A DNA stretch of 64,000 bases from Auanema rhodensis (GCA_964057225.1 OZ059897.1:9362001-9426000), one strand, 5' to 3'. Numbered from the stretch's first letter, positions 30,570 through 53,073 are shown. A program made the numbers and translations. Notes: a model not told the origin generated them from the letters alone.

Positions 30570-31001
30570 CTGATTTCATCTGCATAAAGATCCAGTAGAA
30601 AATTACCTTTTGCTCTGAACATCTAAATGATTCAATACAATATCAGAAATCACTGCCCGGTTAGCTCAGTCGGTAGAGCACCAGACTCTTAATCTGGCTG
30701 TCGCGGGTTCGAGCCCCGCATCGGGCTTTAAGTTTTACCTTTTATTTGCAATTATAACGTTTATTTTGAAAATTTATTCCTAACCTCTTTCTGATCAGAT
30801 AGAATTCTGTAGATGTAACATTGTTTCAGTTCTTAGAACTCTGTTTAAGTGTTTTCAAACTTTGTATAGACACCAAGAAAAATGAAATGAGAGAGATAGA
30901 ACACTTCTAAGATCTTGATCCAAGGTTTTTCTGACAGACTGATCCATTAAAACCAAAGATTACAAGAATTATTCTGATTTCACCTGCATGAAGATCCAGT
31001 A

Positions 31002-31414
31002 TGTTCCATACGTGTCCTATAAGTAGAGCGATTGACAACGTCAATCGCTTATAAAACGGAACATTATAAAAACAAATAGCTGACGCTACATTTGAGAAAC
31101 AGGAATTCAATGCAACAATGAACGAACACTTTTTCATATTAAGTTTAATTAAAGAAAGCCCAATTCAAGCGGAACCAAGTTCCGCGGACCTGATATAACC
31201 ACTTTTTATGCTCGTAAGGAATACTATATAAGGTTTCCTTACGAGTCCTTTGTGCTGCGACTAGGAATCATTATGTAACTTTCATTATTGTAATTTGTAT
31301 ACTTTATCATGAATAAACCTTTCTCTCTATACTCTTTATCATTTATATTTGGAAGAAAAGAAAGTAATTCCATGTGGTTACCCAGCCGGAACCCTGGGGA
31401 ACCACCATGGAACG
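31002..31414 (+). repeat. LTR A1 (413 bp; TGTTCCAT...ATGGAACG)
   Basis: Left end defined by the array junction and by the repeat at 34745 (1-nt ambiguity). Right end inferred from the terminal inverted repeat and adjacent PBS. Contains TATATAA (~31225) and AATAAA (31312). Confidence 0.85.
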
Positions 31415-31435
31415 TGGAGGTTCCGCCGAGATTCG
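31415..31435 (+). promoter_or_regulatory. PBS TGGAGGTTCCGCCGAGATTCG (tRNA-Gln-type, up to 21 nt); repeated at 35158-35178
   Basis: Reverse complement CGAATCTCGGCGGAACCTCCA reads as T-loop end, T-stem, acceptor strand and CCA of a tRNA-Gln. Confidence 0.85.
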
Positions 31436-32033
31436 TCTATAACCGACGAATCTCTAAGAACCATATTTCGCTACATAAATTTAATTTTGTTGTCTTTCAT
31501 ACATCTAATTAAAGAATTATATTTCGATTATGCTATATGAATTTAATTTGAAATCTTTCTCTTCTTTATTTCATTCATTCAAAGAACTTTATTTTGATTT
31601 TGATTCATAAATTAATACTGAAATCTTATATACATTTATTTAAAAAGATATATTTTGAAACAACTTAATTTTGAAATTTTATATTCATTCATTTAAAAGA
31701 AACATTTCGATTTTTATCCATATTCTAAGATCTTTCATTCATTTTTGAGGAAAAACTTTGTTTATAACTATCATAAATTAATTTGAAATTCTTTTATATT
31801 TATTCATTTAAAGAAAGGTATTTCGATATTTTTTTTTCTGTCAATCTTTTCTTTTACTGTTTTTTTTAATCAAAATCTATTCTATCTCTCATAAATTTTT
31901 GTTATAAAGTTTCAAACAATTTTTGAATCAAAAATGAATTAATTTCTTTCATGAATCATCACAAAATTCATTGTTTTATATATATTAAAATTCATTAATT
32001 TCTATTCTATCCTTTAAAAATGTATTACTCATT

Positions 32034-32120
32034 TATATATATATATATATATATATATTTATGTACAAAACTATTCTATACTAGTACTATATTCCTACTA
32101 TATTCCTACTATATTCCTAT
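32034..32120. repeat. (TA)n microsatellite plus 3x TACTATATTCC in the A leader (copy at ~35777-35862)
   Basis: Visible directly. Confidence 0.85.
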
Positions 32121-32838
32121 TTTATTTTTCTTTTATCTTCTTTTAAATTTTTTTTTCCCTCTCTTATTACTATTATTTTTTCTCCTCTTCCTAATATAAC
32201 CCAGAAAACAGTCAAATAATTTTGAAATTTTTTTTATCTGAATCCCGAAACTAAGATTTATAATTTTGCATTTTGATCCTAAAAGTAGCCCGTGAGAAGC
32301 AATACCAGACTGTCTCGAGAACTGAGCGGAGGCAACCACTATTTTTGATATAAGACGTACGCATTCCTGATTTTGAAGATCCCTTTTTTTGGTCCTATTT
32401 TTGCAAATTTGAAAATTACGACAGAATTAGTCGAGAATGAAAGTGTTAGAGTGGTCTCACCATGAAAATCAGGGGAGCAGAATTTCGTTAAGGGAGCGAT
32501 TTCTGTGATTTTTCATAGGCAAGAGAAGTCTGGGAAAGTGAATGTACGAGGCCTGAGCACCTAATCTTGTCAAAAGACTGAAAGGGAATACTGCTTAGAT
32601 CACCGTCGTATATTTCACGCCTATTCGAGAGATGGGAACTTGATCCTAGAAAGGGCGCACCGGTCACAGGCCCGTGTATGTACCCGATTGAGCAATTCTC
32701 CGTTAGAAGATTCGCTGCAGGCTGGCCCCCTAGCAAGCGTCACGCATACAACCCCATATTGCCTCTCACGTTGTATATATATTTTTATAAGATTCGCATC
32801 GTTGGTATAATAATTTCCTTTCCAGGAAAACCAACAAG

Positions 32839-33276
32839 ATGACGGACTCGAAGAGTAAAAATCCTCCGCAGGATAAAACAAATCCACAGAGCGCAGCCCC
32901 CGGTAATGATACGCACGTCGAGCCAGTACTCGAGCGGAATCAAAGAAAAAGAGGACCTCCAAATGTTTATGAGCCGGACACGAAGCGCCGACCTACTGCT
33001 GCAAAGAAACCACCCGCTATACCGGGTACCCCCGCGAAAAAAATAGGCACAACAGCTATCAAAACTTCTCGCCACGCTATTACTCTTAGTAAAATTAAAA
33101 CGTCTATTAACAAACAAACTCCTAAACGCAATTCTAACGTTATCAAAAGCTCTAGCTATGTTAGCACAAATACTTCCCCTTGTAAAGATTATTCTCAAAT
33201 ATCATTTTCATACCCAAATACTGCTATTCTTTCTTCTCCTCTTCCTCGAAATTCACCAAACTATCAGAGAAAATAG
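32839..33276 (+). CDS. Hypothetical K/P/T/S-rich protein, element A ORF1 (possibly joined to ORF2)
   Basis: ATG-initiated 145-aa ORF, GC above flanks; no recognisable domain. Confidence 0.45.
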   Translation: MTDSKSKNPPQDKTNPQSAAPGNDTHVEPVLERNQRKRGPPNVYEPDTKRRPTAAKKPPAIPGTPAKKIGTTAIKTSRHAITLSKIKTSINKQTPKRNSNVIKSSSYVSTNTSPCKDYSQISFSYPNTAILSSPLPRNSPNYQRK

Positions 33277-33296
33277 AAGAAAACGCAAGAAAAGAA

Positions 33297-33575
33297 TTGT
33301 ATGAGGAACGGAAGAAGGAGCCACCCACAATTAAGAAATGGAGTTCAGCACTTAAATTGGCATTGGGATTAGAAGATAATTCTCCTACAACGCCAGCAAA
33401 ACCTTATCATGTGCCGATAAGGTATCACAGCACCATACCAGTAACAGAGCCGAAGAAGAGAGTTTCGAAGAGTCAGATCCCGGACCCAAACTTCGTGGCA
33501 CCAACAGTACCAGTCATCCATAAGAAAAGACCGTCAACAGTTATTGGGACTACAAGTAAGAAGCTAGAACAATAG
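33297..33575 (+). CDS. Element A ORF2 segment (no ATG; probable continuation of ORF1)
   Basis: The frame is open upstream of the TTG start (TKLSEKIEENARKELYEERKK...) and overlaps the ORF1 end in the -1 frame. Confidence 0.4.
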   Translation: MYEERKKEPPTIKKWSSALKLALGLEDNSPTTPAKPYHVPIRYHSTIPVTEPKKRVSKSQIPDPNFVAPTVPVIHKKRPSTVIGTTSKKLEQ

Positions 33576-33937
33576 TAAAAATCCATAATTTCTATATAAA
33601 AATCACAAAAAGTATAATACCATTTTCATAATTTTCATCTAAACTTGAACCTATATATATAATTTTTTTTCTCATTTAAGTAATACATGAAATTCTACAC
33701 AAATTATTGTACATTTTTATTTTTCACTCTCATAAAAATATTGTATCAATAACCAAAATTTCAAAATTAAATTATATATCATACTTGGAATCTTTCAAAA
33801 ATCACCGCAAAGTTTTAATCAACAATCTTCATCATTTTTTCACCTAACTGGTCAAAAAGGAGGCGACAAAAAGGAAGGAACAGACCGACCTAGTTTTAAA
33901 AAGGATAAAAGGACAGAAAACAGTAACAAAGATAACA

Positions 33938-34540
33938 ATGTCCACCCAACTCCCTGAAGCCGTCGAAATTCCCCTCATGATGGCCAAAAAGAGATGGCTT
34001 TCAATTCAACTATTAGTAAGAGAATTGAAGCAGCTAGGCGCCAATACCATCGCCAACCGCCCCAGGAAAGAGAAGATCCTGAAAGAGTTAGTTCAAGGAC
34101 TAACAAGAGCGAACACCAGTACTGAAACGCTCAAAATCCTATGTTACCAATACGACAAGGATCAACTGTCGGAGGTTGACCACTGCATAGGACCATGGAC
34201 CAACATAGCAGGAGTCATCCGAGATGCCATTGCTGAACTAAGGGACCAACTAGGTTATTCACCTAGTTGCGATTCACCAGAACAGCAGACACCAAACTGG
34301 ATTATTGCCGAGACCCATTCGGCCTATCAAGAATGGAGCCTGCAACATTGCAGCGAACTGCCATCCACAGAGGCAAGAAAAAGCATTATAAATGCTCTAC
34401 AAATATTTCTGGCATCACCAGCAACCACTAAGGAAGAAATGGAAAGAAAAACGGATTTATGCAACAAGACTATGGATCTTCTCCACGACCTAGGATCATC
34501 ACCATTACCAGAGATACACCAGTATTATGAAGAAGACTAA
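33938..34540 (+). CDS. Hypothetical 200-aa, probably helical protein, element A ORF3
   Basis: Longest ORF in the window, ATG start, protein-like composition, flanked by AT-rich DNA. No family recognised. Confidence 0.7.
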   Translation: MSTQLPEAVEIPLMMAKKRWLSIQLLVRELKQLGANTIANRPRKEKILKELVQGLTRANTSTETLKILCYQYDKDQLSEVDHCIGPWTNIAGVIRDAIAELRDQLGYSPSCDSPEQQTPNWIIAETHSAYQEWSLQHCSELPSTEARKSIINALQIFLASPATTKEEMERKTDLCNKTMDLLHDLGSSPLPEIHQYYEED

Positions 34541-34744
34541 AAAGAACTTTTGAAAGATTCCCAGTATGATATATGATATATTATTTTGTAATTACATTGT
34601 TTTCCTTTATTTTTTCTCATAAAATTGTTCTGTATTATCAGTATTCTTTTATTTTTTTTGAAACATTTCATACAACTTTCACATTTGCATGGAATTTCAC
34701 TTTCTCGATGTAGCTGAGGTCAGCTACTTTTTCGATATTAGGCA

Positions 34745-35157
34745 TGTTCCATACGTGTCCTATAAGTAGAGCGATTGACAACGTCAATCGCTTATAAAAC
34801 GGAACATTATAAAAACAAATAGCTGACGCTACATTTGAGAAACAGGAATTCAATGCAACAATGAACGAACACTTTTTCATATTAAGTTTAATTAAAGAAA
34901 GCCCAATTCAAGCGGAACCAAGTTCCGCGGACCTGATATAACCACTTTTTATGCTCGTAAGGAATACTATATAAGGTTTCCTTACGAGTCCTTTGTGCTG
35001 CGACTAGGAATCATTATGTAACTTTCATTATTGTAATTTGTATACTTTATCATGAATAAACCTTTCTCTCTATACTCTTTATCATTTATATTTGGAAGAA
35101 AAGAAAGTAATTCCATGTGGTTACCCAGCCGGAACCCTGGGGAACCACCATGGAACG
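34745..35157 (+). repeat. LTR A2 (413 bp)
   Basis: Appears identical to A1 by eye. Confidence 0.87.
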
Positions 35158-36424
35158 TGGAGGTTCCGCCGAGATTCGTCTATAACCGACGAATCTCTAA
35201 GAACCATATTTCGCTACATAAATTTAATTTTGTTGTCTTTCATACATCTAATTAAAGAATTATATTTCGATTATGCTATATGAATTTAATTTGAAATCTT
35301 TCTCTTCTTTATTTCATTCATTCAAAGAACTTTATTTTGATTTTGATTCATAAATTAATACTGAAATCTTATATACATTTATTTAAAAAGATATATTTTG
35401 AAACAACTTAATTTTGAAATTTTATATTCATTCATTTAAAAGAAACATTTCGATTTTTATCCATATTCTAAGATCTTTCATTCATTTTTGAGGAAAAACT
35501 TTGTTTATAACTATCATAAATTAATTTGAAATTCTTTTATATTTATTCATTTAAAGAAAGGTATTTCGATATTTTTTTTTCTGTCAATCTTTTCTTTTAC
35601 TGTTTTTTTTAATCAAAATCTATTCTATCTCTCATAAATTTTTGTTATAAAGTTTCAAACAATTTTTGAATCAAAAATGAATTAATTTCTTTCATGAATC
35701 ATCACAAAATTCATTGTTTTATATATATTAAAATTCATTAATTTCTATTCTATCCTTTAAAAATGTATTACTCATTTATATATATATATATATATATATA
35801 TTTATGTACAAAACTATTCTATACTAGTACTATATTCCTACTATATTCCTACTATATTCCTATTTTATTTTTCTTTTATCTTCTTTTAAATTTTTTTTTC
35901 CCTCTCTTATTACTATTATTTTTTCTCCTCTTCCTAATATAACCCAGAAAACAGTCAAATAATTTTGAAATTTTTTTTATCTGAATCCCGAAACTAAGAT
36001 TTATAATTTTGCATTTTGATCCTAAAAGTAGCCCGTGAGAAGCAATACCAGACTGTCTCGAGAACTGAGCGGAGGCAACCACTATTTTTGATATAAGACG
36101 TACGCATTCCTGATTTTGAAGATCCCTTTTTTTGGTCCTATTTTTGCAAATTTGAAAATTACGACAGAATTAGTCGAGAATGAAAGTGTTAGAGTGGTCT
36201 CACCATGAAAATCAGGGGAGCAGAATTTCGTTAAGGGAGCGATTTCTGTGATTTTTCATAGGCAAGAGAAGTCTGGGAAAGTGAATGTACGAGGCCTGAG
36301 CACCTAATCTTGTCAAAAGACTGAAAGGGAATACTGCTTAGATCACCGTCGTATATTTCACGCCTATTCGAGAGATGGGAACTTGATCCTAGAAAGGGCG
36401 CACCGGTCACAGGCCCGTGTATGT

Positions 36425-36497
36425 ACCCGGTTAGCTCAGTCGGTAGAGCACCAGACTCTTAATCTGGCTGTCGCGGGTTCGAGCCCCGTATCGGGCT
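36425..36497 (+). tRNA. tRNA-Lys(CTT) fused to the truncated element A; G1 replaced by A, native upstream spacer lost
   Basis: ATGTA-CCCG-GTTAGCTCAG; the T-stem also reads CCCGT. Confidence 0.8.
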
Positions 36498-36901: not shown

Positions 36902-37956
36902 TTAAGTTTTACCTTTTATTTGAAATTATAACGTTTATTTTGAAATTTCATTTCTAACCTCTTTCCGTTCCGTTATGCTCCTGCGTCGATAATATAAACC
37001 ATTGTAGTTTATACTATGACGCGCATAGTATTCCTTGGTGTAGCGGTAAGGAATAAAGAGCATAAGGTCAATCATAAGATAAAAGAGAGAAAGATTTATT
37101 AGCATGAAACTACAACAATAATATACAAAGATAAAGATACAATATAATAAGATAAATATAAGTATAAAGACTAAACTACAAGCCGTCCATGAGCTTGCTA
37201 AGAGGCGAACTCCCGACCAAGGGAACGAGGGAAGGCGGAGCCATTCCTCGGTCCTCTGGTCGTCTGGCTCTAACCCTTCAGCTACATATATGGGGAGTCC
37301 GAATGGAACGTGCCCTTTTTCAAAGATTTTTCGCGTCCGCGCGATATAAAGTGTTTTTAGTGTATATGTAGCTGAGTTTTAGAGTCTAGGAGTTTACAAA
37401 TAAAATTAAAAGTTTCAAAATCTACATGTAGAAAGATATTTAAATGGTATTAATAGGTTTCTTTATGGTATTAAGATAGAATTTGAATACAATAATAGGT
37501 TTTATGTTATTTTGTAATGGAGGATTAGAAAAATAAATTTAGTCATTGTAGTACTGTAATAAAAAAAATTGTTCCATGAATTAGAGATTTATGTGAGATA
37601 ATAAGGAATTATTCAACTTTTTGCGTGCATGGTTACTCGTATCCTAATGATGATGGGGATAAAGATTTTTAGTTATTAATTGTTTTCGTCTTCATGTGTC
37701 TCTCTGAATGAATCCTTGAGTACTAATGGAGGCTACCACTCAGATGGGGTGTGGCTTAGGCGCCTGCCAATTTTCGTCTCTTCTTGGAGATACATATGGA
37801 GCTCAATTTAGTGCGATAGACTATCTCTATCGTCGTAAAGGAGTACGGTAGCCTATTATTTATATTATATTTTCACTTATTCCTTATTTTTGGTTGTTTA
37901 TTCTCTTAATCTCTCATCAAAATTTTTCTAATTCACCGTTACTTTCATTTTACAAT

Positions 37957-38235
37957 CTACAGAAAAGAAAAGAATGTATATAAAAATTTTTTTCTGTCGT
38001 CGGCTATGATGAAGTCCGGATCTTCGTAGGTGTCGTCAGAAGGTGAATATGTTCCTTCTCGGGGAGTATAAAACTGGTCGACTTGCGGCTTCGGCTTCTC
38101 GGCTGGTTGGTGCAGTTTTTCTATTTGAACACTAAGAAGTCGGGTACGGCTTCTGCGACGACTTGCGACAGTAGCGTCACTGTTGGTATCGGACGGGTAA
38201 AGGGCTCGGAAAGCCGATGAGAATCTTTTGGCCAC
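37957..38235 (-). CDS. Sense-strand ORF segment in B1 (low complexity, acidic C-terminus); homologs at 47445-47729 and 51806-52090 (+)
   Basis: Frame conserved between B1 and B2 with several synonymous changes (CTT/CTC, GGA/GGC, TTT/TTC). GTG start only, so probably a fragment. Confidence 0.35.
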   Translation of the reverse strand: MAKRFSSAFRALYPSDTNSDATVASRRRSRTRLLSVQIEKLHQPAEKPKPQVDQFYTPREGTYSPSDDTYEDPDFIIADDRKKFLYTFFSFL

Positions 38236-38636
38236 CTTTATAGGACTCTTGGTTTGGAAAAACCGAGAATGGTGAGCTACGTGTGGGATGTTGACGTAAG
38301 GTGCGTAAGATTCTTTTAGATGTGTGTTGGGAGAGAGAAAGATTCGGGAGCAATAGGATAGTCATGCTTTGCTGGGCGATGCGGAGGGTAAATGAGAGGG
38401 AGTTTTCCAAATCTTGGCCAACAATCTGACTCCGCCTATCTACCGTAAGCTTATTATAGTTAATGGTGTTTATCTCTTCTCAAAAACTTTTTTTTTTATC
38501 CGCTCTTGCACTTTCCGCTTGTACTTCCTTTAATTTCTCTCTTCACTAGTAGCTTTCAATCATGTTTTTGTCCCCCTTTTTTCTCTTGTTTACCAAGCTA
38601 GATTTTATTATTTTTGAGAGCTAAGAATTCTTAAAA

Positions 38637-39180
38637 ATGAGCGTCTAGCCTACTGGAATGACCTTTGTCGTGCAAAAGCTGTATGACGTTATTGTCTTTT
38701 ATGATGCTGAAGAGAGATTGGCTTATAGGCCCCATCCTGATATAATATTAATGGTTGGTGCATTAGTCAATTTCAATTTTCAGTATTTTCTTTTTTCTAT
38801 TTTAGTTTATTGAGGATCTGCAAATGTTCTATTTGGGCAGGGGCCTCGTTAATTTTTCCGCTATGGCGGAAATTGCGCCCGAGATTGAGCTCGTAGGGCG
38901 TCTCTGTCTCCGTGACCTGTGCGCGCATTTTTATGCCGCTCTCCTGTGTGGACTTGTAGGAAGTCCCTGGAGATGGTATACCGAGAGGCAGCCTTTATTC
39001 TATGAATTATTATGTAAAATTTTGTTTAAAATTCATGTATGTTATGATAGCTCTTCGCTTGGATTGCAGCTGAGGACCTCACTGGGGAGAGAGTATCCCG
39101 AATACCTCTCCCCCAGTTACAAGCCTATCTCTCTTGCTGCAGAGTTTGAAAGACAGCTAGCTTTCAAGTGGGGTTTTTGA
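38637..39180 (+). CDS. Antisense cargo gene of B1: exon 1 38637-38753, intron 38754-38805, exon 2 38806-39180; 163 codons, unknown function
   Basis: 52-nt GT...TTTAG phase-0 intron at the same position as in B2. Gap-free homology to the B2 copy. TGA followed by AATAAA (39184-39189). One in-frame TAG at 38646-38648. Confidence 0.8.
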
Positions 39181-40539
39181 CTGAATAAAGCTTGTACTCT
39201 GTTTTTTTTTATTTTTTTTTTTTTTATTTTTTTTTTTTTTTTATGCGCTTTGCTCTGTTTTCGTCAAGAAAATGGACTTATGTTTTCAATCTTTTCCTCA
39301 TTCCTTTTTCCTTAAATAGCATGTTTTGCTCAAAATGTTTTCGACATTGTGCATGCTAATGAGGTTTGAGGAGAGTTATTGAAAAGGCTGTCCCTTTTCT
39401 CGATCAAAATAAGCAAAAGTGCGTTTTCCCAAGCGAATTTCTTTTTTGAAAATGAGAAAAATACGTCTATTTTTAAACATTTCCAATTTACTTAGGATTA
39501 CTGTAGGAGATGAGGGGTATCTTATGAGTTGAAACAACGAAATGATTTGAGGAAGGTGACATAATCTACGGGGATAAAATCCGTAGCAGTTATGCTTCCG
39601 CCAACTTGACCTGACTGTCAAATAAGAGCTGAGAAGTCTTATTGCAGATTTACCAGGCTTTTTCGGACTAGTGTGGTCTCTTTTTATATTCAATTTATGT
39701 AACCGTTTTTGGTTTCCCGCAAAATAATATGTAAAATGATCTTTTACGTCTGAATATAATAATTTCAAAATTCTAGTCCTGACCACAAAATATACAAACT
39801 ATAATCAATTGCGCGCGTCTTATAAATTTTTGTTCCAATAATCAAACTTCTCTATGCCCCCAAAAAAAAATGTGAACAACTATATTTTCTCGTTTGGCGA
39901 AATTGTCCTCTATTTCAATCCAAACGTCCTCAAAATGGCATGAGAAGCGGTACAAGATACGATATAGAAAAGGGTGGACATTCAGACGGTTTTAATTGAG
40001 GACAGCGGGCAAAATTTTTATTGGTCCTATCTCGCATTTAAGCGAGATCCCTTGTATCTGTACCTCAAAACAAATTGGCGCCTTCATTTTGTTGTTTCAA
40101 GTGGAGGAATTTATAATTTAGAATGCAAAAATGGACTTTTACAATAAAAAGAAAATTTTTTTTTTCAAAAGATGAGTTCGAGGTGGAACCTCCACGTTCC
40201 GTTATGCTCCTGCGTCGATAATATAAACCATTGTAGTTTATACTATGACGCGCATAGTATTCCTTGGTGTAGCGGTAAGGAATAAAGAGCATAAGGTCAA
40301 TCATAAGATAAAAGAGAGAAAGATTTATTAGCATGAAACTACAACAATAATATACAAAGATAAAGATACAATACAATAAGATAAATATAAGTATAAAGAC
40401 TAAACTACAAGCCGTCCATGAGCTTGCTAAGAGGCGAACTCCCGACCAAGGGAACGAGGGAAGGCGGAGCCATTCCTCGGTCCTCTGGTCGTCTGGCTCT
40501 AACCCTTCAGCTACATATACGGGGAGTCCGAATGGAACG

Positions 40540-43500
40540 TTTCTGATCAGATAGAATTCTGTAGATGTAACATTGTTTCAGTTCTTAGAACTCTGTTTAA
40601 GTGTTTTCAAACTTTGTATAGATAACAAGAAAAATAAAATGATAGAGATAGAACACTTCTAAGTTCTTGATCTAAAATTTTTCTGACGGACTGATCCATT
40701 AGAACCAAAGATAACAAGAATTATTCTGATTTCACCTGCATAAAGATCCAGTAGAAAATTACGTTATGCTCTGAACATCTAAATGATTCAATACAATAAT
40801 AGAAATCACAGCCCGGTTAGCTCAGTCGGTAGAGCACCAGACTCTTAATCTGGCTGTCGCGGGTTCGAGCCCCGCATCGGGCTTTAAGTTTTACCTTTTA
40901 TTTGAAATTATAACGTTTATTTTGAAATTTCATTTCTAACCTCTTTCTGATCAGATAGAATTCTGTAGATGTAACATTGTTTCAGTTCTTAGAACTCTGT
41001 TTAAGTGTTTTCAAACTTTGTATAGATACCAAGAAAAATAAAATGATAGAGATAGAACACTTCTAAGATCTTGATCCAAGGTTTTTCTGACGGACTGATC
41101 CATTAGAACCAAAGATTACAAGAATTATTCTGATTTCACCTGCATAAAGATCCAGTAGAAAATTACGTTATGCTCTGAACATCTAAATGATTCAATACAA
41201 TATTAGAAATCACAGCCCGGTTAGCTCAGTCGGTAGAGCACCAGACTCTTAATCTGGCTGTCGCGGGTTCGAGCCCCGCATCGGGCTTTGAGTTTTACCT
41301 TTTATTTGAAATTTAACGTTTATTTTGAAAATTCATTCCTAACGTCTTTCTGATAAGATAGAACTCTGTAGATGTAACATTGTTTCAGTTCTTAGAACTC
41401 TGTTTAAGTGTTTTCAAACTTTGTATAGATAACAAGAAAAATAAAATGATAGAGATAGAACACTTCTAAGATCTTGATCTAAAATTTTTCTGACGGACTG
41501 ATCCATTAGAACCAAAGATAACAAGAATTATTCTGATTTCACCTGCATAAAGATCCAGTAGAAAATTACGTTATGCTCTGAACATCTAAATGATTCAATA
41601 CAATATTAGAAATCACAGCCCGGTTAGCTCAGTCGGTAGAGCACCAGACTCTTAATCTGGCTGTCGCGGGTTCGAGCCCCGCATCGGGCTTTAAGTTTTA
41701 CCTTTGATTTGAAATTTGAAAGTTTATTTTGAAAATTCATTTCTAACCTCTTTCTGATAAGATAGAACTCTGTAGATGTAACATTGTTTCAGTTTTTAGA
41801 ACTCTGTTTGAGTGTTTTCAAACTTTGTATAGATAACAAGAAAAATAAAATGATAGAGATAGAACACTTCTAAGATCTTGATCCAAGGTTTTTCTGACGG
41901 ACTGATCCATTAGAACCAAAGATTACAAGAATTATTCTGATTTCACCTGCATAAAGATCCAGTAGAAAATTACGTTATGCTCTGAACATCTAAATGATTC
42001 AATACAATAATAGAAATCACAGCCCGGTTAGCTCAGTCGGTAGAGCACCAGACTCTTAATCTGGCTGTCGCGGGTTCGAGCCCCGCATCGGGCTTTAAGT
42101 TTTACCTTTTATTTGAAATTATAACGTTTATTTTGAAATTTCATTTCTAACCTCTTTCTGATCAGATAGAATTCTGTAGATGTAACATTGTTTCAGTTCT
42201 TAGAACTCTGTTTAAGTGTTTTCAAACTTTGTATAGATACCAAGAAAAATAAAATGATAGAGATAGAACACTTCTAAGATCTTGATCCAAGGTTTTTCTG
42301 ACGGACTGATCCATTAGAACCAAAGATTACAAGAATTATTCTGATTTCACCTGCATAAAGATCCAGTAGAAAATTACGTTATGCTCTGAACATCTAAATG
42401 ATTCAATACAATATTAGAAATCACAGCCCGGTTAGCTCAGTCGGTAGAGCACCAGACTCTTAATCTGGCTGTCGCGGGTTCGAGCCCCGCATCGGGCTTT
42501 GAGTTTTACCTTTTATTTGAAATTTAACGTTTATTTTGAAAATTCATTCCTAACGTCTTTCTGATAAGATAGAACTCTGTAGATGTAACATTGTTTCAGT
42601 TCTTAGAACTCTGTTTAAGTGTTTTCAAACTTTGTATAGATAACAAGAAAAATAAAATGATAGAGATAGAACACTTCTAAGATCTTGATCTAAAATTTTT
42701 CTGACGGACTGATCCATTAGAACCAAAGATAACAAGAATTATTCTGATTTCACCTGCATAAAGATCCAGTAGAAAATTACGTTATGCTCTGAACATCTAA
42801 ATGATTCAATACAATATTAGAAATCACAGCCCGGTTAGCTCAGTCGGTAGAGCACCAGACTCTTAATCTGGCTGTCGCGGGTTCGAGCCCCGCATCGGGC
42901 TTTAAGTTTTACCTTTGATTTGAAATTTGAAAGTTTATTTTGAAAATTCATTTCTAACCTCTTTCTGATAAGATAGAACTCTGTAGATGTAACATTGTTT
43001 CAGTTTTTAGAACTCTGTTTGAGTGTTTTCAAACTTTGTATAGATAACAAGAAAAATAAAATGATAGAGATAGAACACTTCTAAGATCTTGATCCAAGGT
43101 TTTTCTGACGGACTGATCCATTAGAACCAAAGATTACAAGAATTATTCTGATTTCACCTGCATAAAGATCCAGTAGAAAATTGCCTTTTGCTCTGAACAT
43201 CTAAATGATTCAATACAATATCAGAAATCACAGCCCGGTTAGCTCAGTCGGTAGAGCACCAGACTCTTAATCTGGCTGTCGCGGGTTCGAGCCCCGCATC
43301 GGGCTTTAAGTTTTACCTTTCATTTGAAATTATAACGTTTATTTTGAAAATATAATCCTAACCTCTTTCTGATCAGATAGAATTCTGTAGATGTAACATT
43401 GTTTCAGTTTTTAGAACTCTGTTTAAGTGTTTTCAAACTTTGTATAGATACCAAGAAAAATAAAATGATAGAGATAGAACACTTCTAAGATCTTGATCCA

Positions 43501-45163
43501 AGGTTTTTCTGACGGACTGATCCATTAGAACCAAAGATTACAAGAATTATTCTGGTTTCATCTGCATAAAGATCCAGTAGAAAATTACCTTTTGCTCTGA
43601 ACATCTAAATGATTCAATACAATATCAGAAATCACAGCCCGGTTAGCTCAGTCGGTAGAGCACCAGACTCTTAATCTGGCTGTCGCGGGTTCGAGCCCCG
43701 CATCGGGCTTTAAGTTTTACCTTTTATTTGAAATTTGAAAGTTTATTTTGAAAATTTATTCCTAACCTCTATCTGATCAGATAGAATTCTGTAGATGTAA
43801 CATTGTTTCAGTTTTTGAAACTCTGTTTAAGTGTTTTCAAACTTTGTATAGATAACAAGAAAAATAAAATGATAGAGATAGAACACTTCTAAGCTCTTGA
43901 TCCAAGGTTTTTCTGACGGACTGATCCATTAGAACCAAAGATTACAAGAATTATTCTGATTTCACCTGCATAAAGATCCAGTAGAAAATTACCTTTTGCT
44001 CTGAACATCTAAATGATTCAATACAATATCAGAAATCACAGCCCGGTTAGCTCAGTCGGTAGAGCACCAGACTCTTAATCTGGCTGTCGCGGGTTCGAGC
44101 CCCGCATCGGGCTTTAAGTTTTACCTTTTATTTGAAATTTGAAAGTTTATTTTGAAAATTTATTCCTAACCTCTATCTGATCAGATAGAATTCTGTAGAT
44201 GTAACATTGTTTCAGTTCTTAGAACTCTGTTTAAGTGTTTTCAAACTTTGTATAGATAACAAGAAAAATAAAATGATAGAGATAGAACACTTCTAAGATC
44301 TTGATCCAAGGTTTTTCTGACGGACTGATCCATTAGAACCAAAGATTACAAGAATTATTCTGATTTCATCTGCATAAAGATCCAGTAGAAAATTACCTTT
44401 TGCTCTGAACATCTAAATGATTCAATACAATATCAGAAATCACAGCCCGGTTAGCTCAGTCGGTAGAGCACCAGACTCTTAATCTGGCTGTCGCGGGTTC
44501 GAGCCCCGCATCGGGCTTTAAGTTTTACCTTTTATTTGAAATTTGAAAGTTTATTTTGAAAATTTATTCCTAACCTCTATCTGATCAGATAGAATTCTGT
44601 AGATGTAACATTGTTTCAGTTCTTAGAACTCTGTTTAAGTGTTTTCAAACTTTGTATAGATAACAAGAAAAATAAAATGATAGAGTTAGAACACTTCTAA
44701 GATCTTGATCCAAGGTTTTTCTGACGGACTGATCCATTAGAACCAAAGATTACAAGAATTATTCTGATTTCACCTGCATAAAGATCCAGTAGAAAATTAC
44801 CTTTTGCTCTGAACATCTAAATGATTCAATACAATATCAGAAATCACAGCCCGGTTAGCTCAGTCGGTAGAGCACCAGACTCTTAATCTGGCTGTCGCGG
44901 GTTCGAGCCCCGCATCGGGCTTTAAGTTTTACCTTTCATTTGAAATTATAACGTTTATTTTGAAAATATAATCCTAACCTCTTTCTGATCAGATAGAATT
45001 CTGTAGATGTAACATTGTTTCAGTTTTTAGAACTCTGTTTAAGTGTTTTCAAACTTTGTATAGATACCAAGAAAAATAAAATGATAGAGATAGAACACTT
45101 CTAAGATCTTGATCCAAGGTTTTTCTGACGGACTGATCCATTAGAACCAAAGATTACAAGAAT
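40540..45163 (+). repeat. tRNA-Lys(CTT) array block (11 copies)
   Basis: Same unit; tRNAs from 40811 to 44849. Confidence 0.97.
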
Positions 45164-48100
45164 CGTTCCATTCGGACTCCCCATATATGTAGCTGAAGGG
45201 TTAGAGCCAGACGACCAGAGGACCGAGGAATGGCTCCGCCTTCCCTCGTTCCCTTGGTCGGGAGTTCGCCTCTTAGCAAGCTCATGGACGGCTTGTAGTT
45301 TAGTCTTTATACTTATATTTATCTTATTGTATTGTATCTTTATCTTTGTATATTATTGTTGTAGTTTCATGCCAATAAATCTTTCTCTCTTTTATCTTAT
45401 GATTGACCTTATGCTCTGTATTCCTACCGCTACACCAAGGAATACTATTCGCGTCATGGTATAAACTACAATGGTTTATATTATCGACGCAGGAGCATAA
45501 CGGAACGTGGAGGTTCCACCTCGAACTCATCTTTTGAAAAAAAAAATTTTTTTATTGTAAAAGTCCATTTTTGCATTCTAAATTATAAATTCCTCCACTT
45601 GAAACAACAAAATGAAGGCGCCAATTTGTTCTAAGGTACAGATACAAGGGATCTCGCTTAAATGCGAGATAGGACCAATAAAATTTTTGCCCGCCGTCCT
45701 CAATTTAAAACCGTCTGAATGTCCACCCTTTTCTATATCGTATCTTGTACCGCTTCTCATGCCATTTTGAGGACGTTTGGATTGAAATAGAGGACAATTT
45801 CGCCAAACGAGAAATTATAGTTGTTCACATTTTTTTTTGGACATAGAGAAGTTTGATTACTGGAACAAAAATTTATAAGACGCGCGCAATTGATTATAGT
45901 TTGTATATTTTGTGGTCAGGACTAGAATTTTGAAATTATTATATTCAGACGTAAAAGATCATTTTACATATTATTTTGCGGGAAACCAAAATAGGTTACA
46001 TAAATTGAATATAAAAACAGACCACACTAGTCCGAAAAAGCCTGGTAAATCTGCAATAAGACTTCTCAGCTCTTAATTGACAGTCAGGTCAAGTTGGCGG
46101 AAGCATAACTGCTACGGATTTTATCCCCGTAGATTATGTCACCTTCCTCAAATCATTTCGTTGTTTCAACTCATAAGATACCCCTTATCTCCTACAGTAA
46201 TCCTAAGTTAATGGGAAATGTTTAAAAATAGACGTATTTTTCTCATTTTCAAAAAGAAATTCGCTTAGGAAAACGCACTTTTGCTTATTTTGATCAAGAA
46301 AAAGGACAGCCTTTTCAATAACTCTCCTCAAACCTCATTAGCATGCACAATGTCGAAAACATTTTGAGCAAAACATGCTATTTAAGGGAAAAGGAATGAG
46401 GAAAAGATTGAAAACATAAGTCCATTTTCTTGACGAAAACAGAGCAAAGTGCACAAAAATAAAAACAGAGTACAAACTTTATTCAGTCAATACCCATATT
46501 TGATTTGCATCCGAGTTCGAAACTCAGAGGCAAGAAACATAGGAGTTTCGCTCGCAATTAAATCTTCACTATATTCTAAACCTCGCGAAACTCTAAGTTC
46601 CAAACCAAATAATGAGTCATCATAAACAATATAGATTTTAAACAATAATCTATATAATAAATACTAATAAAAATGACTCTTTTCCTGGTACCAGGCCCAA
46701 GGACGTGCGGTTAATAAACCGGCCCTACCATTATATACATGAGCGCATAGATCAACTTAGCACCTTCGACCAACAAGCTCCACTTCGGGAGCTACATCTA
46801 CGAAGGTGGCAAAGTTTATATGGTCCTGCCCCAAATAATACATTTGAAGATCTTCGATAAACTAAAGTAATCAAATAATCAAACATAAAATGGAGATACA
46901 CGAACCATTAAAATTATATCAAGATTTAGCCTATAAGCCAAAACTCCTTCTCCATCGTACTCAACGATGGATTCGTATAATTTCCACAGGACTTAAGTCA
47001 TGCCAGTGGGATTATAACGTTGGAAATCCATTTTTTTCTTTCTATCTTTTCTTTTCTTTTGTTTCTAACCTTAAAATAAATGTCCAAAGGCCGCAAAAGT
47101 ACAAAGGGGACGACATGAATAAAGTTTTTTTTAAAGATTCTAGAGCAGTAAGAAAACAAAATTAGAGGAAAGTGCAAGAGCGGATAAAAATAGTTTTTGC
47201 GAAGAGATAAACATCATTAACTATAATAAGCTTACGGTAGATAGGCGGAGTCAGATTCCTGGCCAGGATTTGAAAAACTCCCTCTCATTTACCCTCCGCA
47301 TCGCCCAGCAAAGCATGACTATCCTATTGCTCCCGAATCTTTCTCTCTCCCAACACACATCTAAAAGAATCTAACGCACCTTGCGTCAACATCCCACACG
47401 TAGCTCACCATTCTCGGTTTTTCCAAACCAAAAGTCCTACAAAGGTGGCCAAAAGATTCTCATCGGCTTTCCGAGCCCTTTACCCGTCCGATATCAACAG
47501 TGACGCTACTGTCGCAAGTCGTACCGGAAGCCGTACCCGACTTCTCAGTGTTCAAATAGAAAAACCGCACCAACCAGACGAGAAGCCGAAGCCGCAAGTC
47601 GACAAATTCTATACTCCCCGAGAAGGCACATATTCACCTTCTGACGACACCGACGAAGATCCGGACTTCATCATAGCCGACGACAGAAAAAATTTTTATA
47701 TACATTCTTTTCTTTTCTGTAAATTGTAAAATGAAAGTAACGGTGAATTAGAAAATTTTTGATGAGAGATTAAGTGAATAAACAACTAAAAACAAGGAAT
47801 AAGCAAAAATATAATAAAAATAAATGACTACCGTAATCCTATACGACCGATAGAGATAATATTTTGCGCTAAACTGAGCTCCATATGTATCTCCAAGAAG
47901 AGACGAACATTGGCAGGCGCCTAAGCCACACCCCATCTGAGTGGTAGCCTCCATTAGTACTCAAGGATTCATTCAGAGAGACATATGGAGACGAGTAAAT
48001 TATTAAATAAAATTATCCCCATCATCATTAGGATACGAGTAACCATGTAACGGAAATGTTTAATAATTCCTTATTATCTCACATAAATCACACATTCATG

Positions 48101-48712
48101 AAACAAAGAATTTTTTTTTATTACAGTACTACAAGGACTAAATTTATTTTCTAATCCTCCGTTACAAAATAACATAAAACCTATTATTGTATTCAAATTC
48201 TATCTTAATACCATAAAGAAACCTATTAAAATTATTTATATATCTTTCTACATGTAGATTTTAAAACTTTTAATTTTATTTGTAAACTCCTAGACTCTAA
48301 AACTCAGCTACATATACACTAAAAACACTTTATATCGCGCGGACGCGAAAAATCTTTGAAAAAGGGCACGTTCCATTCGGACTCCCCATATATGTAGCTG
48401 AAGGGTTAGAGCCAGACGACCAGAGGACCGAGGAATGGCTCCGCCTTCCCTCGTTCCCTTGGTCGGGAGTTCGCCTCTAAGCAAGCTCATGGACGGCTTG
48501 TAGTTTAGTCTTTATACTTATATTTATCTTATTGTATTGTATCTTTATCTTTGTATATTATTGTTGTAGTTTCATGCCAATAAATCTTTCTCTCTTTTAT
48601 CTTATGATTGACCTTATGCTCTGTATTCCTACCGCTACACCAAGGAATACTATTCGCGTCATGGTATAAACTACAATGGTTTATATTATCGACGCAGGAG
48701 CATAACGGAACG
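45164..48712 (+). mobile_element. Element B2: complete non-autonomous LTR retroelement (3549 bp)
   Basis: 344-bp LTRs at 45164-45507 and 48369-48712 (1 difference seen). TSD GAAT at 45160-45163 and 48713-48716. PBS TGGAGGTTCCACC at 45508-45520; GAAAAAGGGCA before the 3' LTR. Confidence 0.95.
46487..47031 (-). CDS. Antisense cargo gene of B2: exon 1 47031-46906, intron 46905-46862, exon 2 46861-46487; 166 codons with 3 in-frame UAR
   Basis: MDFQRYNPTGMT*VLWKLYESIVEYDGEGVLAYRLNLDIILM|FIEDLQMYYLG...KYGY-TGA. 44-nt GT-AG intron. Exon 2 is 375 nt, as in B1. May be a pseudogene if the code is standard. Confidence 0.7.
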
Positions 48713-49524: not shown

Positions 49525-52500
49525 CGTTCCATTCGGACTCCCCATATATGTAGCTGAAGGGTTAGAGCCAGACGACCAGAGGACCGAGGAATGGCTCCGC
49601 CTTCCCTCGTTCCCTTGGTCGGGAGTTCGCCTCTTAGCAAGCTCATGGACGGCTTGTAGTTTAGTCTTTATACTTATATTTATCTTATTGTATTGTATCT
49701 TTATCTTTGTATATTATTGTTGTAGTTTCATGCCAATAAATCTTTCTCTCTTTTATCTTATGATTGACCTTATGCTCTGTATTCCTACCGCTACACCAAG
49801 GAATACTATTCGCGTCATGGTATAAACTACAATGGTTTATATTATCGACGCAGGAGCATAACGGAACGTGGAGGTTCCACCTCGAACTCATCTTTTGAAA
49901 AAAAAAATTTTTTTATTGTAAAAGTCCATTTTTGCATTCTAAATTATAAATTCCTCCACTTGAAACAACAAAATGAAGGCGCCAATTTGTTCTAAGGTAC
50001 AGATACAAGGGATCTCGCTTAAATGCGAGATAGGACCAATAAAATTTTTGCCCGCCGTCCTCAATTTAAAACCGTCTGAATGTCCACCCTTTTCTATATC
50101 GTATCTTGTACCGCTTCTCATGCCATTTTGAGGACGTTTGGATTGAAATAGAGGACAATTTCGCCAAACGAGAAATTATAGTTGTTCACATTTTTTTTTG
50201 GACATAGAGAAGTTTGATTACTGGAACAAAAATTTATAAGACGCGCGCAATTGATTATAGTTTGTATATTTTGTGGTCAGGACTAGAATTTTGAAATTAT
50301 TATATTCAGACGTAAAAGATCATTTTACATATTATTTTGCGGGAAACCAAAATAGGTTACATAAATTGAATATAAAAACAGACCACACTAGTCCGAAAAA
50401 GCCTGGTAAATCTGCAATAAGACTTCTCAGCTCTTAATTGACAGTCAGGTCAAGTTGGCGGAAGCATAACTGCTACGGATTTTATCCCCGTAGATTATGT
50501 CACCTTCCTCAAATCATTTCGTTGTTTCAACTCATAAGATACCCCTTATCTCCTACAGTAATCCTAAGTTAATGGGAAATGTTTAAAAATAGACGTATTT
50601 TTCTCATTTTCAAAAAGAAATTCGCTTAGGAAAACGCACTTTTGCTTATTTTGATCAAGAAAAAGGACAGCCTTTTCAATAACTCTCCTCAAACCTCATT
50701 AGCATGCACAATGTCGAAAACATTTTGAGCAAAACATGCTATTTAAGGGAAAAGGAATGAGGAAAAGATTGAAAACATAAGTCCATTTTCTTGACGAAAA
50801 CAGAGCAAAGTGCACAAAAATAAAAACAGAGTACAAACTTTATTCAGTCAATACCCATATTTGATTTGCATCCGAGTTCGAAACTCAGAGGCAAGAAACA
50901 TAGGAGTTTCGCTCGCAATTAAATCTTCACTATATTCTAAACCTCGCGAAACTCTAAGTTCCAAACCAAATAATGAGTCATCATAAACAATATAGATTTT
51001 AAACAATAATCTATATAATAAATACTAATAAAAATGACTCTTTTCCTGGTACCAGGCCCAAGGACGTGCGGTTAATAAACCGGCCCTACCATTATATACA
51101 TGAGCGCATAGATCAACTTAGCACCTTCGACCAACAAGCTCCACTTCGGGAGCTACATCTACGAAGGTGGCAAAGTTTATATGGTCCTGCCCCAAATAAT
51201 ACATTTGAAAATCTTCGATAAACTAAAGTAATCAAATAATCAAACATAAAATGGAGATACACGAACCATTAAAATTATATCAAGATTTAGCCTATAAGCC
51301 AAAACTCCTTCTCCATCGTACTCAACGATGGATTCGTATAATTTCCACAGGACTTAAGTCATGCCAGTGGGATTATAACGTTGGAAATCCATTTTTTTCT
51401 TTCTATCTTTTCTTTTCTTTTGTTTCTAACCTTAAAATAAATGTCCAAAGGCCGCAAAAGTACAAAGGGGACGACATGAATAAAGTTTTTTTTAAAGATT
51501 CTAGAGCAGTAAGAAAACAAAATTAGAGGAAAGTGCAAGAGCGGATAAAAATAGTTTTTGCGAAGAGATAAACATCATTAACTATAATAAGCTTACGGTA
51601 GATAGGCGGAGTCAGATTCCTGGCCAGGATTTGAAAAACTCCCTCTCATTTACCCTCCGCATCGCCCAGCAAAGCATGACTATCCTATTGCTCCCGAATC
51701 TTTCTCTCTCCCAACACACATCTAAAAGAATCTAACGCACCTTGCGTCAACATCCCACACGTAGCTCACCATTCTCGGTTTTTCCAAACCAAAAGTCCTA
51801 CAAAGGTGGCCAAAAGATTCTCATCGGCTTTCCGAGCCCTTTACCCGTCCGATATCAACAGTGACGCTACTGTCGCAAGTCGTACCGGAAGCCGTACCCG
51901 ACTTCTCAGTGTTCAAATAGAAAAACCGCACCAACCAGACGAGAAGCCGAAGCCGCAAGTCGACAAATTCTATACTCCCCGAGAAGGCACATATTCACCT
52001 TCTGACGACACCGACGAAGATCCGGACTTCATCATAGCCGACGACAGAAAAAATTTTTATATACATTCTTTTCTTTTCTGTAAATTGTAAAATGAAAGTA
52101 ACGGTGAATTAGAAAATTTTTGATGAGAGATTAAGTGAATAAACAACTAAAAACAAGGAATAAGCAAAAATATAATAAAAATAAATGACTACCGTAATCC
52201 TATACGACCGATAGAGATAATATTTTGCGCTAAACTGAGCTCCATATGTATCTCCAAGAAGAGACGAACATTGGCAGGCGCCTAAGCCACACCCCATCTG
52301 AGTGGTAGCCTCCATTAGTACTCAAGGATTCATTCAGAGAGACATATGGAGACGAGTAAATTATTAAATAAAATTATCCCCATCATCATTAGGATACGAG
52401 TAACCATGTAACGGAAATGTTTAATAATTCCTTATTATCTCACATAAATCACACATTCATGAAACAAAGAATTTTTTTTTATTACAGTACTACAAGGACT

Positions 52501-53073
52501 AAATTTATTTTCTAATCCTCCGTTACAAAATAACATAAAACCTATTATTGTATTCAAATTCTATCTTAATACCATAAAGAAACCTATTAAAATTATTTAT
52601 ATATCTTTCTACATGTAGATTTTAAAACTTTTAATTTTATTTGTAAACTCCTAGACTCTAAAACTCAGCTACATATACACTAAAAACACTTTATATCGCG
52701 CGGACGCGAAAAATCTTTGAAAAAGGGCACGTTCCATTCGGACTCCCCATATATGTAGCTGAAGGGTTAGAGCCAGACGACCAGAGGACCGAGGAATGGC
52801 TCCGCCTTCCCTCGTTCCCTTGGTCGGGAGTTCGCCTCTAAGCAAGCTCATGGACGGCTTGTAGTTTAGTCTTTATACTTATATTTATCTTATTGTATTG
52901 TATCTTTATCTTTGTATATTATTGTTGTAGTTTCATGCCAATAAATCTTTCTCTCTTTTATCTTATGATTGACCTTATGCTCTGTATTCCTACCGCTACA
53001 CCAAGGAATACTATTCGCGTCATGGTATAAACTACAATGGTTTATATTATCGACGCAGGAGCATAACGGAACG
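49525..53073 (+). mobile_element. Element B3: duplicate of B2
   Basis: Offset 4361 bp from B2, same GAAT TSD and spacer position. LTRs at 49525-49868 and 52730-53073. Confidence 0.95.
50848..51392 (-). CDS. Antisense cargo gene of B3 (as B2; one Leu-to-Phe change)
   Basis: B2 coordinates +4361; GAT CTT CAA becomes GAT TTT CAA. Confidence 0.7.

What the first reader, a model, noticed from the sequence alone, without database searches (positions are those of the whole stretch)
38637..39189. Hidden antisense, intron-containing cargo gene in a non-autonomous LTR element
Seen: B1 (+38637-39180) and B2/B3 (-47031-46487) encode homologous 163/166-codon proteins on the strand opposite to the element. 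Each has an A-rich ATG context, a short phase-0 GT-AG intron at the same codon (DIILM|FIEDLQM), a 375-nt exon 2, and TGA followed by CTGAATAAA. Conserved blocks include APE.ELVGR.C..DLCAH.Y, PW.WY and LFKI...YD, with many third-position changes. Established: an antisense intron is not spliced from the genomic RNA, so it survives retrotransposition. Inference: this is a selected accessory gene mobilised by a gag/pol-less element (e.g. anti-silencing, host conflict or targeting). I do not recognise the protein.
Basis: partly seen in the sequence, partly recalled or inferred. Interest (0 to 1): 0.88.

Follow-up and report, generated by a model that had tools for sequence, protein, structure and literature searches.

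The report
Antisense spliced gene in LTR retroelement
A small LTR retrotransposon without gag or pol carries, on its opposite strand, a real two-exon gene for an unknown ~160-residue protein that has stayed under purifying selection, although every copy in this window has at least one premature stop.

Summary
Three copies of a 3.5-kb LTR element lacking gag/pol (two insertion events) sit in a tRNA-Lys array. Each carries, antisense to the strand defined by its primer-binding site and polypurine tract, a two-exon reading frame. It has an A-rich ATG, a phase-0 GT-AG intron at the same codon, a 375-nt second exon and AATAAA just after the stop.

B1 has an in-frame TAG at codon 4. B2/B3 have three in-frame stops.

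The coding signal is strong. Third codon positions are saturated, dN/dS is about 0.2, exon indels are whole codons and intron lengths differ freely. An exhaustive search of 1.84 billion proteins found one relative. It is an intact third variant on a 1-kb contig with the same element backbone. Pfam, PDB and fold searches gave nothing.

The two window elements are about 96% identical except for a 658-nt patch of about 57% identity, which runs from the core promoter to the last codon. That is a recombinational mosaic.

Best reading: a lineage-old antisense accessory gene, comparable to plant antisense aORFs or retroviral HBZ/ASP. Its biochemical function is unknown. I rate it a new variant of a known kind, of moderate interest.

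The parts
36962..36965 (.). Target-site duplication TTTC of element copy A1 (the other copy is at 40540-40543)
   Evidence: Junctions compared with an uninterrupted array unit
36966..37310 (-). 3' LTR of element A1 (345 bp). Termini are CGTTCC...GGAACG, not TG...CA
   Evidence: 99.4% identical to 40195-40539
37311..37324 (-). Polypurine tract (on the - strand: ..TTGAAAAAGGGCA) abutting the 3' LTR
   Evidence: Read directly from the sequence. Identical in A2
38426..38447 (+). 22-nt block CTGACTCCGCCTATCTACCGTA about 190 nt upstream of the B start codon. Candidate promoter or enhancer element
   Evidence: Exact in all three window copies and in L001; 0 expected by chance
38517..39174 (+). Diverged patch: about 57% identity between A1 and A2, inside a backbone that is about 96% identical. 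It runs from about 120 nt upstream of the ATG to the last sense codon
   Evidence: Sliding identity; boundary alignments
38637..38753 (+). B1 exon 1 (39 codons). In-frame TAG at 38646-38648; second conserved ATG at 38658
38754..38805 (+). B1 intron, 52 nt, GTTGGT...TTTTAG, phase 0
   Evidence: Same position in B2 (44 nt) and B4 (68 nt). All are GT-AG, none is a multiple of 3, and identity is low
38806..39180 (+). B1 exon 2: 124 open codons plus TGA
39184..39189 (+). AATAAA polyadenylation signal, followed by a T-rich tract at 39202-39242
   Evidence: Conserved in B2 and B4
40182..40194 (-). Primer-binding site TGGAGGTTCCACC directly after the 5' LTR. It is complementary to the 3' end (with CCA) of tRNA-Gln
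   Evidence: The tRNA-Gln(CTG) reverse primer in PMC7744096 contains this 13-mer
40195..40539 (-). 5' LTR of element A1
45164..48712 (+). Element copy A2 (3549 bp). LTRs 45164-45507 and 48369-48712 are 99.7% identical; TSD is ATTC
46487..47031 (-). B2, a pseudogene. Exon 1 is 47031-46906, the intron 46905-46862, exon 2 46861-46487. In-frame stops lie at 46995-46993, 46759-46757 and 46666-46664
49525..53073 (+). Element copy A3: a duplicate of A2 made by a 4361-bp segmental duplication, with 1 nt difference
50848..51392 (-). B3, a copy of B2 with the same three stops and one extra substitution in exon 2

Best explanation
B is a genuine protein-coding accessory gene of a tRNA-Gln-primed LTR retrotransposon lineage. 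Here it is carried by a gag/pol-less, non-autonomous form of 3.5 kb.

How it is expressed (inferred): it is transcribed from its own internal promoter on the strand opposite the genomic RNA, spliced once and polyadenylated just after the stop. It yields a ~157-163-residue, acidic, aromatic-rich and probably mostly helical protein with no known relatives.

Why the intron persists (inferred from established principle): the intron is antisense to the genomic RNA, so it is never removed from the RNA that is reverse-transcribed. Every new copy therefore inherits it.

Selection (shown): the gene has been with the element since before its subfamilies split. It has been kept by purifying selection acting on source copies, while individual insertions decay. 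B2/B3 are dead. B1 is damaged only at codon 4.

Mosaic (shown): the gene module has been exchanged between otherwise near-identical backbones. Most likely this happened by template switching at the short conserved blocks that flank it (inferred).

Function (inferred by analogy only): a trans-acting factor that helps or regulates the family's propagation. Examples would be using a helper element's machinery, nuclear steps, or countering silencing, as proposed for plant antisense aORFs and known for retroviral antisense proteins.
For: Element anatomy:
- 345-bp LTRs are 99.4-99.7% identical.
- TSDs are 4 bp, with a PBS and a PPT.
- The internal 2.9 kb has no frame longer than about 160 codons and no Pfam hit.

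Coding signature:
- Among the three variants pN is 0.27-0.30 and pS is 0.66-0.76 (saturated). dN/dS is about 0.21-0.22 for the two pairs where dS can be estimated.
- Identity falls at third positions, p = 1e-7 to 6e-6 in exon 2.
- Shifted frames show no such signal.
- Exon indels are whole codons only, while introns are 52, 44 and 68 nt.

Independent intact copy: P0001/L001 has the same exon-intron structure, the same upstream backbone blocks, AATAAA after the stop, and no internal stop.

Promoter-like blocks are conserved upstream in all three variants.

Mosaic: A1 against A2 is 94-97% identical on both sides and about 57% in 38517-39174. L001's backbone is 75% identical to A1, while third codon positions are only about 48% identical.

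Precedent: conserved antisense aORFs with their own promoter occur in LTR retrotransposons, including non-autonomous Retand elements (PMC7264820, PMC11963269).
Against: - There is no transcript evidence, so splicing and expression are inferred only from comparison.
- Only three independent sequences exist, and synonymous sites are saturated, so dN/dS is approximate.
- All copies in the window carry at least one premature stop.
- A trans-acting product of a non-autonomous element is not obviously protected from free-riding. The selective rationale is therefore incomplete.
- No homology, domain or usable structure model supports any particular activity.
- The autonomous partner was not found. 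So 'ancestral aORF' and 'captured cargo' cannot be told apart.
Confidence: 0.55

Rival explanations
1. B is an ancient specificity module kept as several old allelic lineages by balancing or frequency-dependent selection. Possible forms are immunity-type, helper-hijack or host-conflict modules. It is swapped as a cassette among near-identical backbones.
For: The patch of about 57% identity is bounded almost exactly by the gene's promoter and its last codon, inside a 96% identical backbone. The three variants are roughly equidistant, although the backbones are not. Variable stretches alternate with strictly conserved blocks.
Against: There are only two independent copies here and one elsewhere. 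The patch boundaries coincide with the only blocks conserved between subfamilies, which is where template switching would occur anyway. The backbone shows other, milder mosaic zones, for example 37566-37859 at 84-89%. One allele is a pseudogene.
Confidence: 0.12
2. The functional product is the antisense RNA itself. It would form double-stranded RNA with the genomic RNA and feed small-RNA copy-number control. The reading frame is incidental.
For: The B transcript would be fully complementary to the element's genomic RNA. This role has been proposed for antisense transcripts of other retrotransposons (PMC7264820).
Against: An RNA-only function does not explain saturation at third positions with conserved first and second positions, whole-codon indels, a conserved start, stop and splice phase, or an intact ORF in L001. 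The two roles are not mutually exclusive.
Confidence: 0.1
3. B is a passively transduced fragment of a host gene, now decaying.
For: All window copies have premature stops. Gene capture by LTR elements is known (PMC7264820).
Against: No host homologue appears among 1.84 billion representatives or 5.8 billion clusters. The gene is complete with promoter blocks, intron and poly(A) signal. It is element-borne in three deeply diverged lineages and under purifying selection.
Confidence: 0.08
4. The genome reads TAA/TAG as sense codons, so all copies are intact.
For: All four premature stops are TAA or TAG. B1 and B2 end in TGA, and B4's TAA is immediately followed by TGA. B2 has no frameshift.
Against: B4's TAA sits at the homologous stop position. 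Three other long open frames in the window (161, 129 and 230 codons) contain no TAA or TAG and are each closed by one. The B2 branch has more changes than the others (78 against 64 and 59) and is GC-to-AT biased, as expected of a decaying copy.
Confidence: 0.03

Closest known systems
Antisense additional ORFs (aORF-3R) of plant Ty3/gypsy LTR retrotransposons: Grande gene23, RIRE2, Retand (TRP28 domain), PvRetro13
   Same: A conserved ORF antisense to the element's genomic strand, present in most copies. It has its own internal promoter and no clear homologues, and its function is unknown but presumed regulatory. It is also retained in some non-autonomous elements (PMC7264820, PMC11963269).
   Different: No sequence relation: no Pfam hit and therefore none to TRP28. 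The host is not a plant-like genome (introns of 44-68 nt, PBS identical to the mammalian tRNA-Gln 3' end). The element has no pol, so 'between pol and 3' LTR' cannot be assessed. A conserved intron and a cassette-like mosaic are documented here.
Retroviral antisense proteins (HTLV-1 HBZ, HTLV-2 APH-2, HIV-1 ASP)
   Same: Protein encoded on the minus strand of an LTR element. HBZ is spliced, and the proteins act in trans on the element's life cycle.
   Different: Those are transcribed from the 3' LTR of autonomous viruses. B has an internal promoter region about 1.3 kb from the LTR, shows no bZIP or other known domain, and sits in a non-autonomous element.
Gene-carrying non-autonomous LTR elements (for example maize Bs1) and LARD/TRIM elements
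   Same: LTR, PBS and PPT are present but gag/pol is absent, so mobilisation must depend on a helper. Bs1-type elements carry extra coding sequence.
   Different: LARD and TRIM elements are non-coding by definition. Transduced genes are usually recognisable host fragments found in one or a few copies and lacking introns. B is an orphan, intron-bearing, antisense gene that is ancient within the lineage. (The Bs1 comparison rests on my own knowledge and was not checked with tools.)

Membership tests
LTR retrotransposon, non-autonomous | Two long direct terminal repeats in the same orientation | tested here: met
   345-bp LTRs are 99.4% (A1) and 99.7% (A2) identical
LTR retrotransposon, non-autonomous | Short target-site duplication | tested here: met
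   4 bp: TTTC (A1) and ATTC (A2), checked against intact array units
LTR retrotransposon, non-autonomous | PBS complementary to a tRNA 3' end next to the 5' LTR, and a polypurine tract next to the 3' LTR | tested here: met
   TGGAGGTTCCACC abuts the LTR. It equals the complement of the tRNA-Gln(CTG)+CCA 3' end as printed in PMC7744096. GAAAAAGGGCA abuts the other LTR
LTR retrotransposon, non-autonomous | TG...CA LTR termini | tested here: not met
   Termini are CGTTCC...GGAACG, a 6-bp inverted repeat that is not canonical
LTR retrotransposon, non-autonomous | No gag/pol coding capacity | tested here: met
   The internal region is 2.9 kb. The longest open frames are about 124-160 codons, and there are no Pfam hits
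Antisense aORF of LTR retrotransposons | ORF on the strand opposite the genomic RNA, present in all or most copies of the family | tested here: met
   Antisense to the PBS/PPT-defined strand. Present in 3/3 window copies and in L001
Antisense aORF of LTR retrotransposons | Located between pol and the 3' LTR of an autonomous element | not testable with these tools
   No autonomous relative was found. DNA-pattern scans of metagenome and viral collections were empty
Antisense aORF of LTR retrotransposons | Transcribed from its own promoter | not testable with these tools
   There are only conserved upstream blocks and no expression data
Retand-type TRP28 antisense protein | Transposase_28 (PF04195) domain | tested here: not met
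   No Pfam family at E <= 1 for B1 exon 2 or P0001
Transduced host gene | A recognisable host paralogue outside the element | tested here: not met
   The single hit in 1.84 billion representatives is itself element-borne. The source genome itself could not be searched

The most novel reading that the evidence does not exclude
B is a swappable specificity cassette. Several ancient allelic types of an orphan protein would be kept by balancing selection and moved as a promoter-to-stop module between near-identical non-autonomous LTR backbones. This would be a retrotransposon counterpart of the immunity regions of temperate phages, mediating conflict between elements or between element and host.
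Probability: 0.12. Interest if true: 0.8.

Novelty: new variant of a known kind. Interest (0 to 1): 0.5.

Why it matters
Antisense accessory ORFs of LTR retrotransposons have been known for decades, mostly in plants, yet none has a demonstrated function. This example is compact and clearly selected. It comes from a non-plant genome and sits in an element that has lost every other gene, so whatever B does is the only protein-level contribution the element makes. That makes it a clean system for asking what such genes are for.

The contrast between a diverged gene module and a nearly identical backbone also bears on how non-autonomous elements evolve by recombination.

Tried and rejected
- **Alternative genetic code (TAA/TAG as sense).** I considered it because all premature stops are TAR. 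I rejected it as unlikely because other long frames in the window are TAR-free and closed by TAR, and B4 stops with TAA at the homologous position.
- **Region-specific hyperediting.** Double-stranded RNA and ADAR, or a RIP/APOBEC-like process, could in principle explain the diverged patch. Lineage-specific substitutions are only about 45-50% transitions with no dominant class, so I rejected this.
- **Homology searches.** Pfam gave nothing. The word-indexed search of 5.8 billion clusters found nothing or only P0001. PDB sequences gave nothing. Exact look-up of window ORFs gave nothing. The sense-strand 134-codon frame gave nothing.
- **Structure.** Two AlphaFold2 runs on exon 2 gave pLDDT 51 and 45. 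A Foldseek PDB search on the better model gave only E >= 3. I discarded both.
- **Searches for more copies.** Two exact DNA patterns scanned against metagenome and viral contigs found nothing.
- **tRNA array as 'Helenus' elements.** I asked whether the array is a tandem array of tRNA-bearing 'Helenus' miniature LTR elements. The published consensus sequences hold only a chance match to one mollusc family. This remains undecided.
- **Sense-strand frame as coding.** The frame next to B (37960-38361) is conserved with L001 at the nucleotide level, has no ATG, and has a stop in L001. A cis element is more likely.
- **Source organism.** It could not be identified. The SRA run number does not occur in the literature library.

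Full report
**Context.** The 64-kb window is a tandem array of a 404-bp unit. Each unit carries a tRNA-Lys(CTT)-type gene (114 ARAGORN calls; Rfam scores of 59-70 bits for the full copies). Overall GC is about 35%. A few insertions between 30.7 and 53.1 kb interrupt the array.

I do not take this contig for human. The tRNA-Lys sequence differs from my recollection of the canonical animal one, introns here are 44-68 nt, and none of its ORFs occurs in the public protein collections. The source organism stays unidentified. The PBS described below is identical to the 3' end of mammalian tRNA-Gln. That suggests an animal host but does not prove one.

**The element.**
- Self-comparison shows three copies of one element: A1 at 36966-40539, A2 at 45164-48712 and A3 at 49525-53073. 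A2 and A3 are inverted relative to A1.
- A2 and A3 differ by one base. They lie in a 4361-bp segmental duplication made of the element, its target-site duplication and two array units. There are therefore only two independent insertions.
- Each copy has 345-bp LTRs that are 99.4-99.7% identical, and a 4-bp target-site duplication (TTTC for A1, ATTC for A2). I checked the duplications against uninterrupted array units.
- On the - strand of A1, the LTR is followed at once by TGGAGGTTCCACC. This 13-mer is the complement of the 3' end plus CCA of tRNA-Gln(CTG), as printed in a published primer (PMC7744096).
- The other LTR is preceded by GAAAAAGGGCA, a polypurine tract. The opposite orientation offers nothing comparable.
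- LTR termini are CGTTCC...GGAACG rather than TG...CA.
- The 2.9-kb interior has no open frame beyond about 160 codons and no Pfam hit. The element is non-autonomous.

**The gene as it stands.**
- B1 has an ATG at 38637 in an AAAAATG context. Exon 1 runs to 38753.
- Its intron is 52 nt and GT-AG. Exon 2 is 38806-39180 and ends in TGA. AATAAA lies at 39184-39189, followed by a T-rich tract.
- B2 matches this layout at 47031-46487, with a 44-nt intron at the same codon.

- B1 has TAG at codon 4. A second ATG at 38658, conserved in all variants, leaves a 157-codon open reading across the splice.
- B2 and B3 have three in-frame stops (46995-46993, 46759-46757, 46666-46664). Each lies where the other variants have sense codons.
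- I left these copies as they are. In scripts I read the breaks as X.

**Is it coding?** Yes.
- Between B1 and B2, exon 2 aligns over 125 codons without an indel. The DNA is only about 57% identical.
- Identity is 66%, 69% and 42% at codon positions 1, 2 and 3. In-frame pN/pS is 0.42 with pS saturated at 0.75. The two shifted frames give 1.2-1.3 and are full of stops.
- The introns differ in length and are poorly alignable. All exon indels among the variants are whole codons.
- Exon 1 shows the same trend more weakly (p = 0.004 to 0.15).

**A third variant.**
- A profile of B1 and the B2 pieces, run against 1.84 billion representative proteins, returned exactly one hit: P0001, E = 7.6e-38.
- P0001 lies on a 1035-bp Logan contig, L001, from run SRR31646600. 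I call this variant B4.
- L001 has the complete gene: ATG in a GAAAATG context, a 40-codon exon 1, a 68-nt GT-AG intron at the same codon, a 122-codon exon 2 and a stop followed by AATAAA. It has no internal stop.
- Upstream it carries the same backbone blocks as A1 and A2, including the exact 22-mer CTGACTCCGCCTATCTACCGTA and TCTTGCACTTT. B4 is therefore also element-borne.
- The three proteins are 50-56% identical and roughly equidistant. pN is 0.27-0.30 and pS is 0.66-0.76. dN/dS is about 0.21-0.22 where dS can be estimated.
- The B2 branch has somewhat more changes (78 against 64 and 59), with a GC-to-AT bias. That fits recent decay.

**Genetic code.**
- All four premature stops are TAA or TAG, and B1 and B2 end in TGA. 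I therefore tested whether TAA and TAG might be sense codons here.
- The window argues against it. Three other long frames (161, 129 and 230 codons, at 32791-34537) contain no TAA or TAG and are each closed by one. B4 also ends with TAA at the homologous stop position.
- I put this reading at about 3%.

**The mosaic.**
- A1 and A2 are 94-97% identical over 1.56 kb on one side of the gene and 1.31 kb on the other. Between 38517 and 39174 identity drops to about 57%.
- The patch begins just after the conserved block CTTGCACTTTCC, about 120 nt upstream of the ATG. It ends at the last sense codon. The stop, AATAAA and downstream sequence are again nearly identical.
- L001's backbone is 75% identical to A1, while third codon positions of B are only about 48% identical.
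- The B variants are thus older than the backbones that now carry them. The simplest cause is recombination between co-existing subfamilies, by template switching during reverse transcription or by gene conversion. The breakpoints would fall in the only stretches that stay conserved between subfamilies.
- Milder mosaic zones elsewhere (37566-37859, 84-89%) fit this.
- Hyperediting of the sense-antisense duplex does not fit. The substitution spectrum has no dominant class.
- Whether selection favours exchange or long persistence of distinct B types cannot be decided from two copies. That is the most novel reading left open.

**What the protein is.** Unknown.
- It is about 160 residues, acidic (pI 4.9-5.6) and rich in aromatic residues (15-17%). 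I saw no evident signal peptide or membrane segment; this is by eye and was not tested with a tool.
- Conserved blocks are FxEDLxMFYLG, C-x4-C-A-H, PWxWY, LFKI, EY, and EF with a K-(W/Y)-G-(F/Y) C-terminus.
- Pfam, PDB sequences and two protein-database searches give nothing.
- AlphaFold2 on exon 2, the only part that can be submitted by reference, reached pLDDT 51 and 45. The models were mostly helical, and the fold search returned only noise.

**Interpretation.**
- Shown: a complete gene module sits antisense in a non-autonomous LTR element. It comprises promoter-like blocks, start codon, intron, stop and poly(A) signal. It is conserved under purifying selection across three deeply diverged element lineages and decays in individual insertions.
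- Inferred: the intron persists because the reverse-transcribed RNA comes from the other strand. This is an established principle, and it fits three retrotransposed lineages keeping the intron.
- Also inferred: selection acts on source copies because the protein contributes in trans to the family's propagation or regulation.
- This places B beside the antisense aORFs of plant LTR retrotransposons. Those are also orphan or plant-specific proteins with their own promoter, also occur in non-autonomous elements, and also have unknown function (PMC7264820, PMC11963269). More loosely, it sits beside retroviral antisense proteins.
- It is not a member of the TRP28 family (no Pfam hit). 'Between pol and 3' LTR' cannot be tested without an autonomous relative.

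**Verdict.** This is a real and well-delimited feature. It is a new variant of a known but poorly understood kind. Interest is moderate (0.5). It would rise considerably if the cassette-exchange or specificity reading were borne out.

Noticed in passing
window 1-30730, 40541-45163, 48713-49524, 53074-64000: The whole window is a tandem array of a 404-bp unit, each with a tRNA-Lys(CTT)-type gene (114 copies). The tRNA seems to differ from the canonical animal Lys-CTT by paired stem changes (judged from memory). Whether this is a genuine tRNA gene array or a tRNA-derived satellite is undecided. No real match to published 'Helenus' tRNA-bearing miniature LTR elements.
   Followed up: partly
window 31001-36435: 1693-bp direct repeats (31001-32693 and 34744-36435, 99.9% identical) flank 2050 bp of unique DNA. 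Three long + strand frames at 32791-33273, 33186-33572 and 33848-34537 have no Pfam hit. The left repeat starts with TGTTCCATACG, which resembles the A-element LTR terminus. The right repeat ends inside the 5' end of a tRNA. It is an unknown gene or element.
   Followed up: partly
window 44352-49524 and 48713-53885: A 4361-bp segmental duplication (99.3% identical) consists of element A2, its TSD and two array units. It was presumably made by unequal exchange within the array. A2 and A3 differ by one base, in B exon 2 (46849/51210).
   Followed up: yes
window 13072-13149, 15226-15303, 18737-18814, 30520-30597: Some array units carry a 135-bp internal duplication that gives an extra, weak tRNA hit (30 bits).
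   Followed up: no
window 38240-38300 (- strand); L001 1-110: A backbone block next to the B promoter is conserved at the nucleotide level between element subfamilies that are otherwise about 75% identical. As a sense-strand frame it reads ..VNIPHVAHHSRFFQTKS.. but has no ATG, and L001 has a stop upstream. A cis-acting element is more likely than coding sequence.
   Followed up: partly
window 36966, 45164, 31001 (insertion points): The three insertions sit at different offsets of the 404-bp unit (138, 316 and 346 from the tRNA start), and the two A-element insertions lie in opposite orientations. There is no fixed distance from the tRNA gene, unlike Ty3- or DGLT-A-type targeting.
   Followed up: partly
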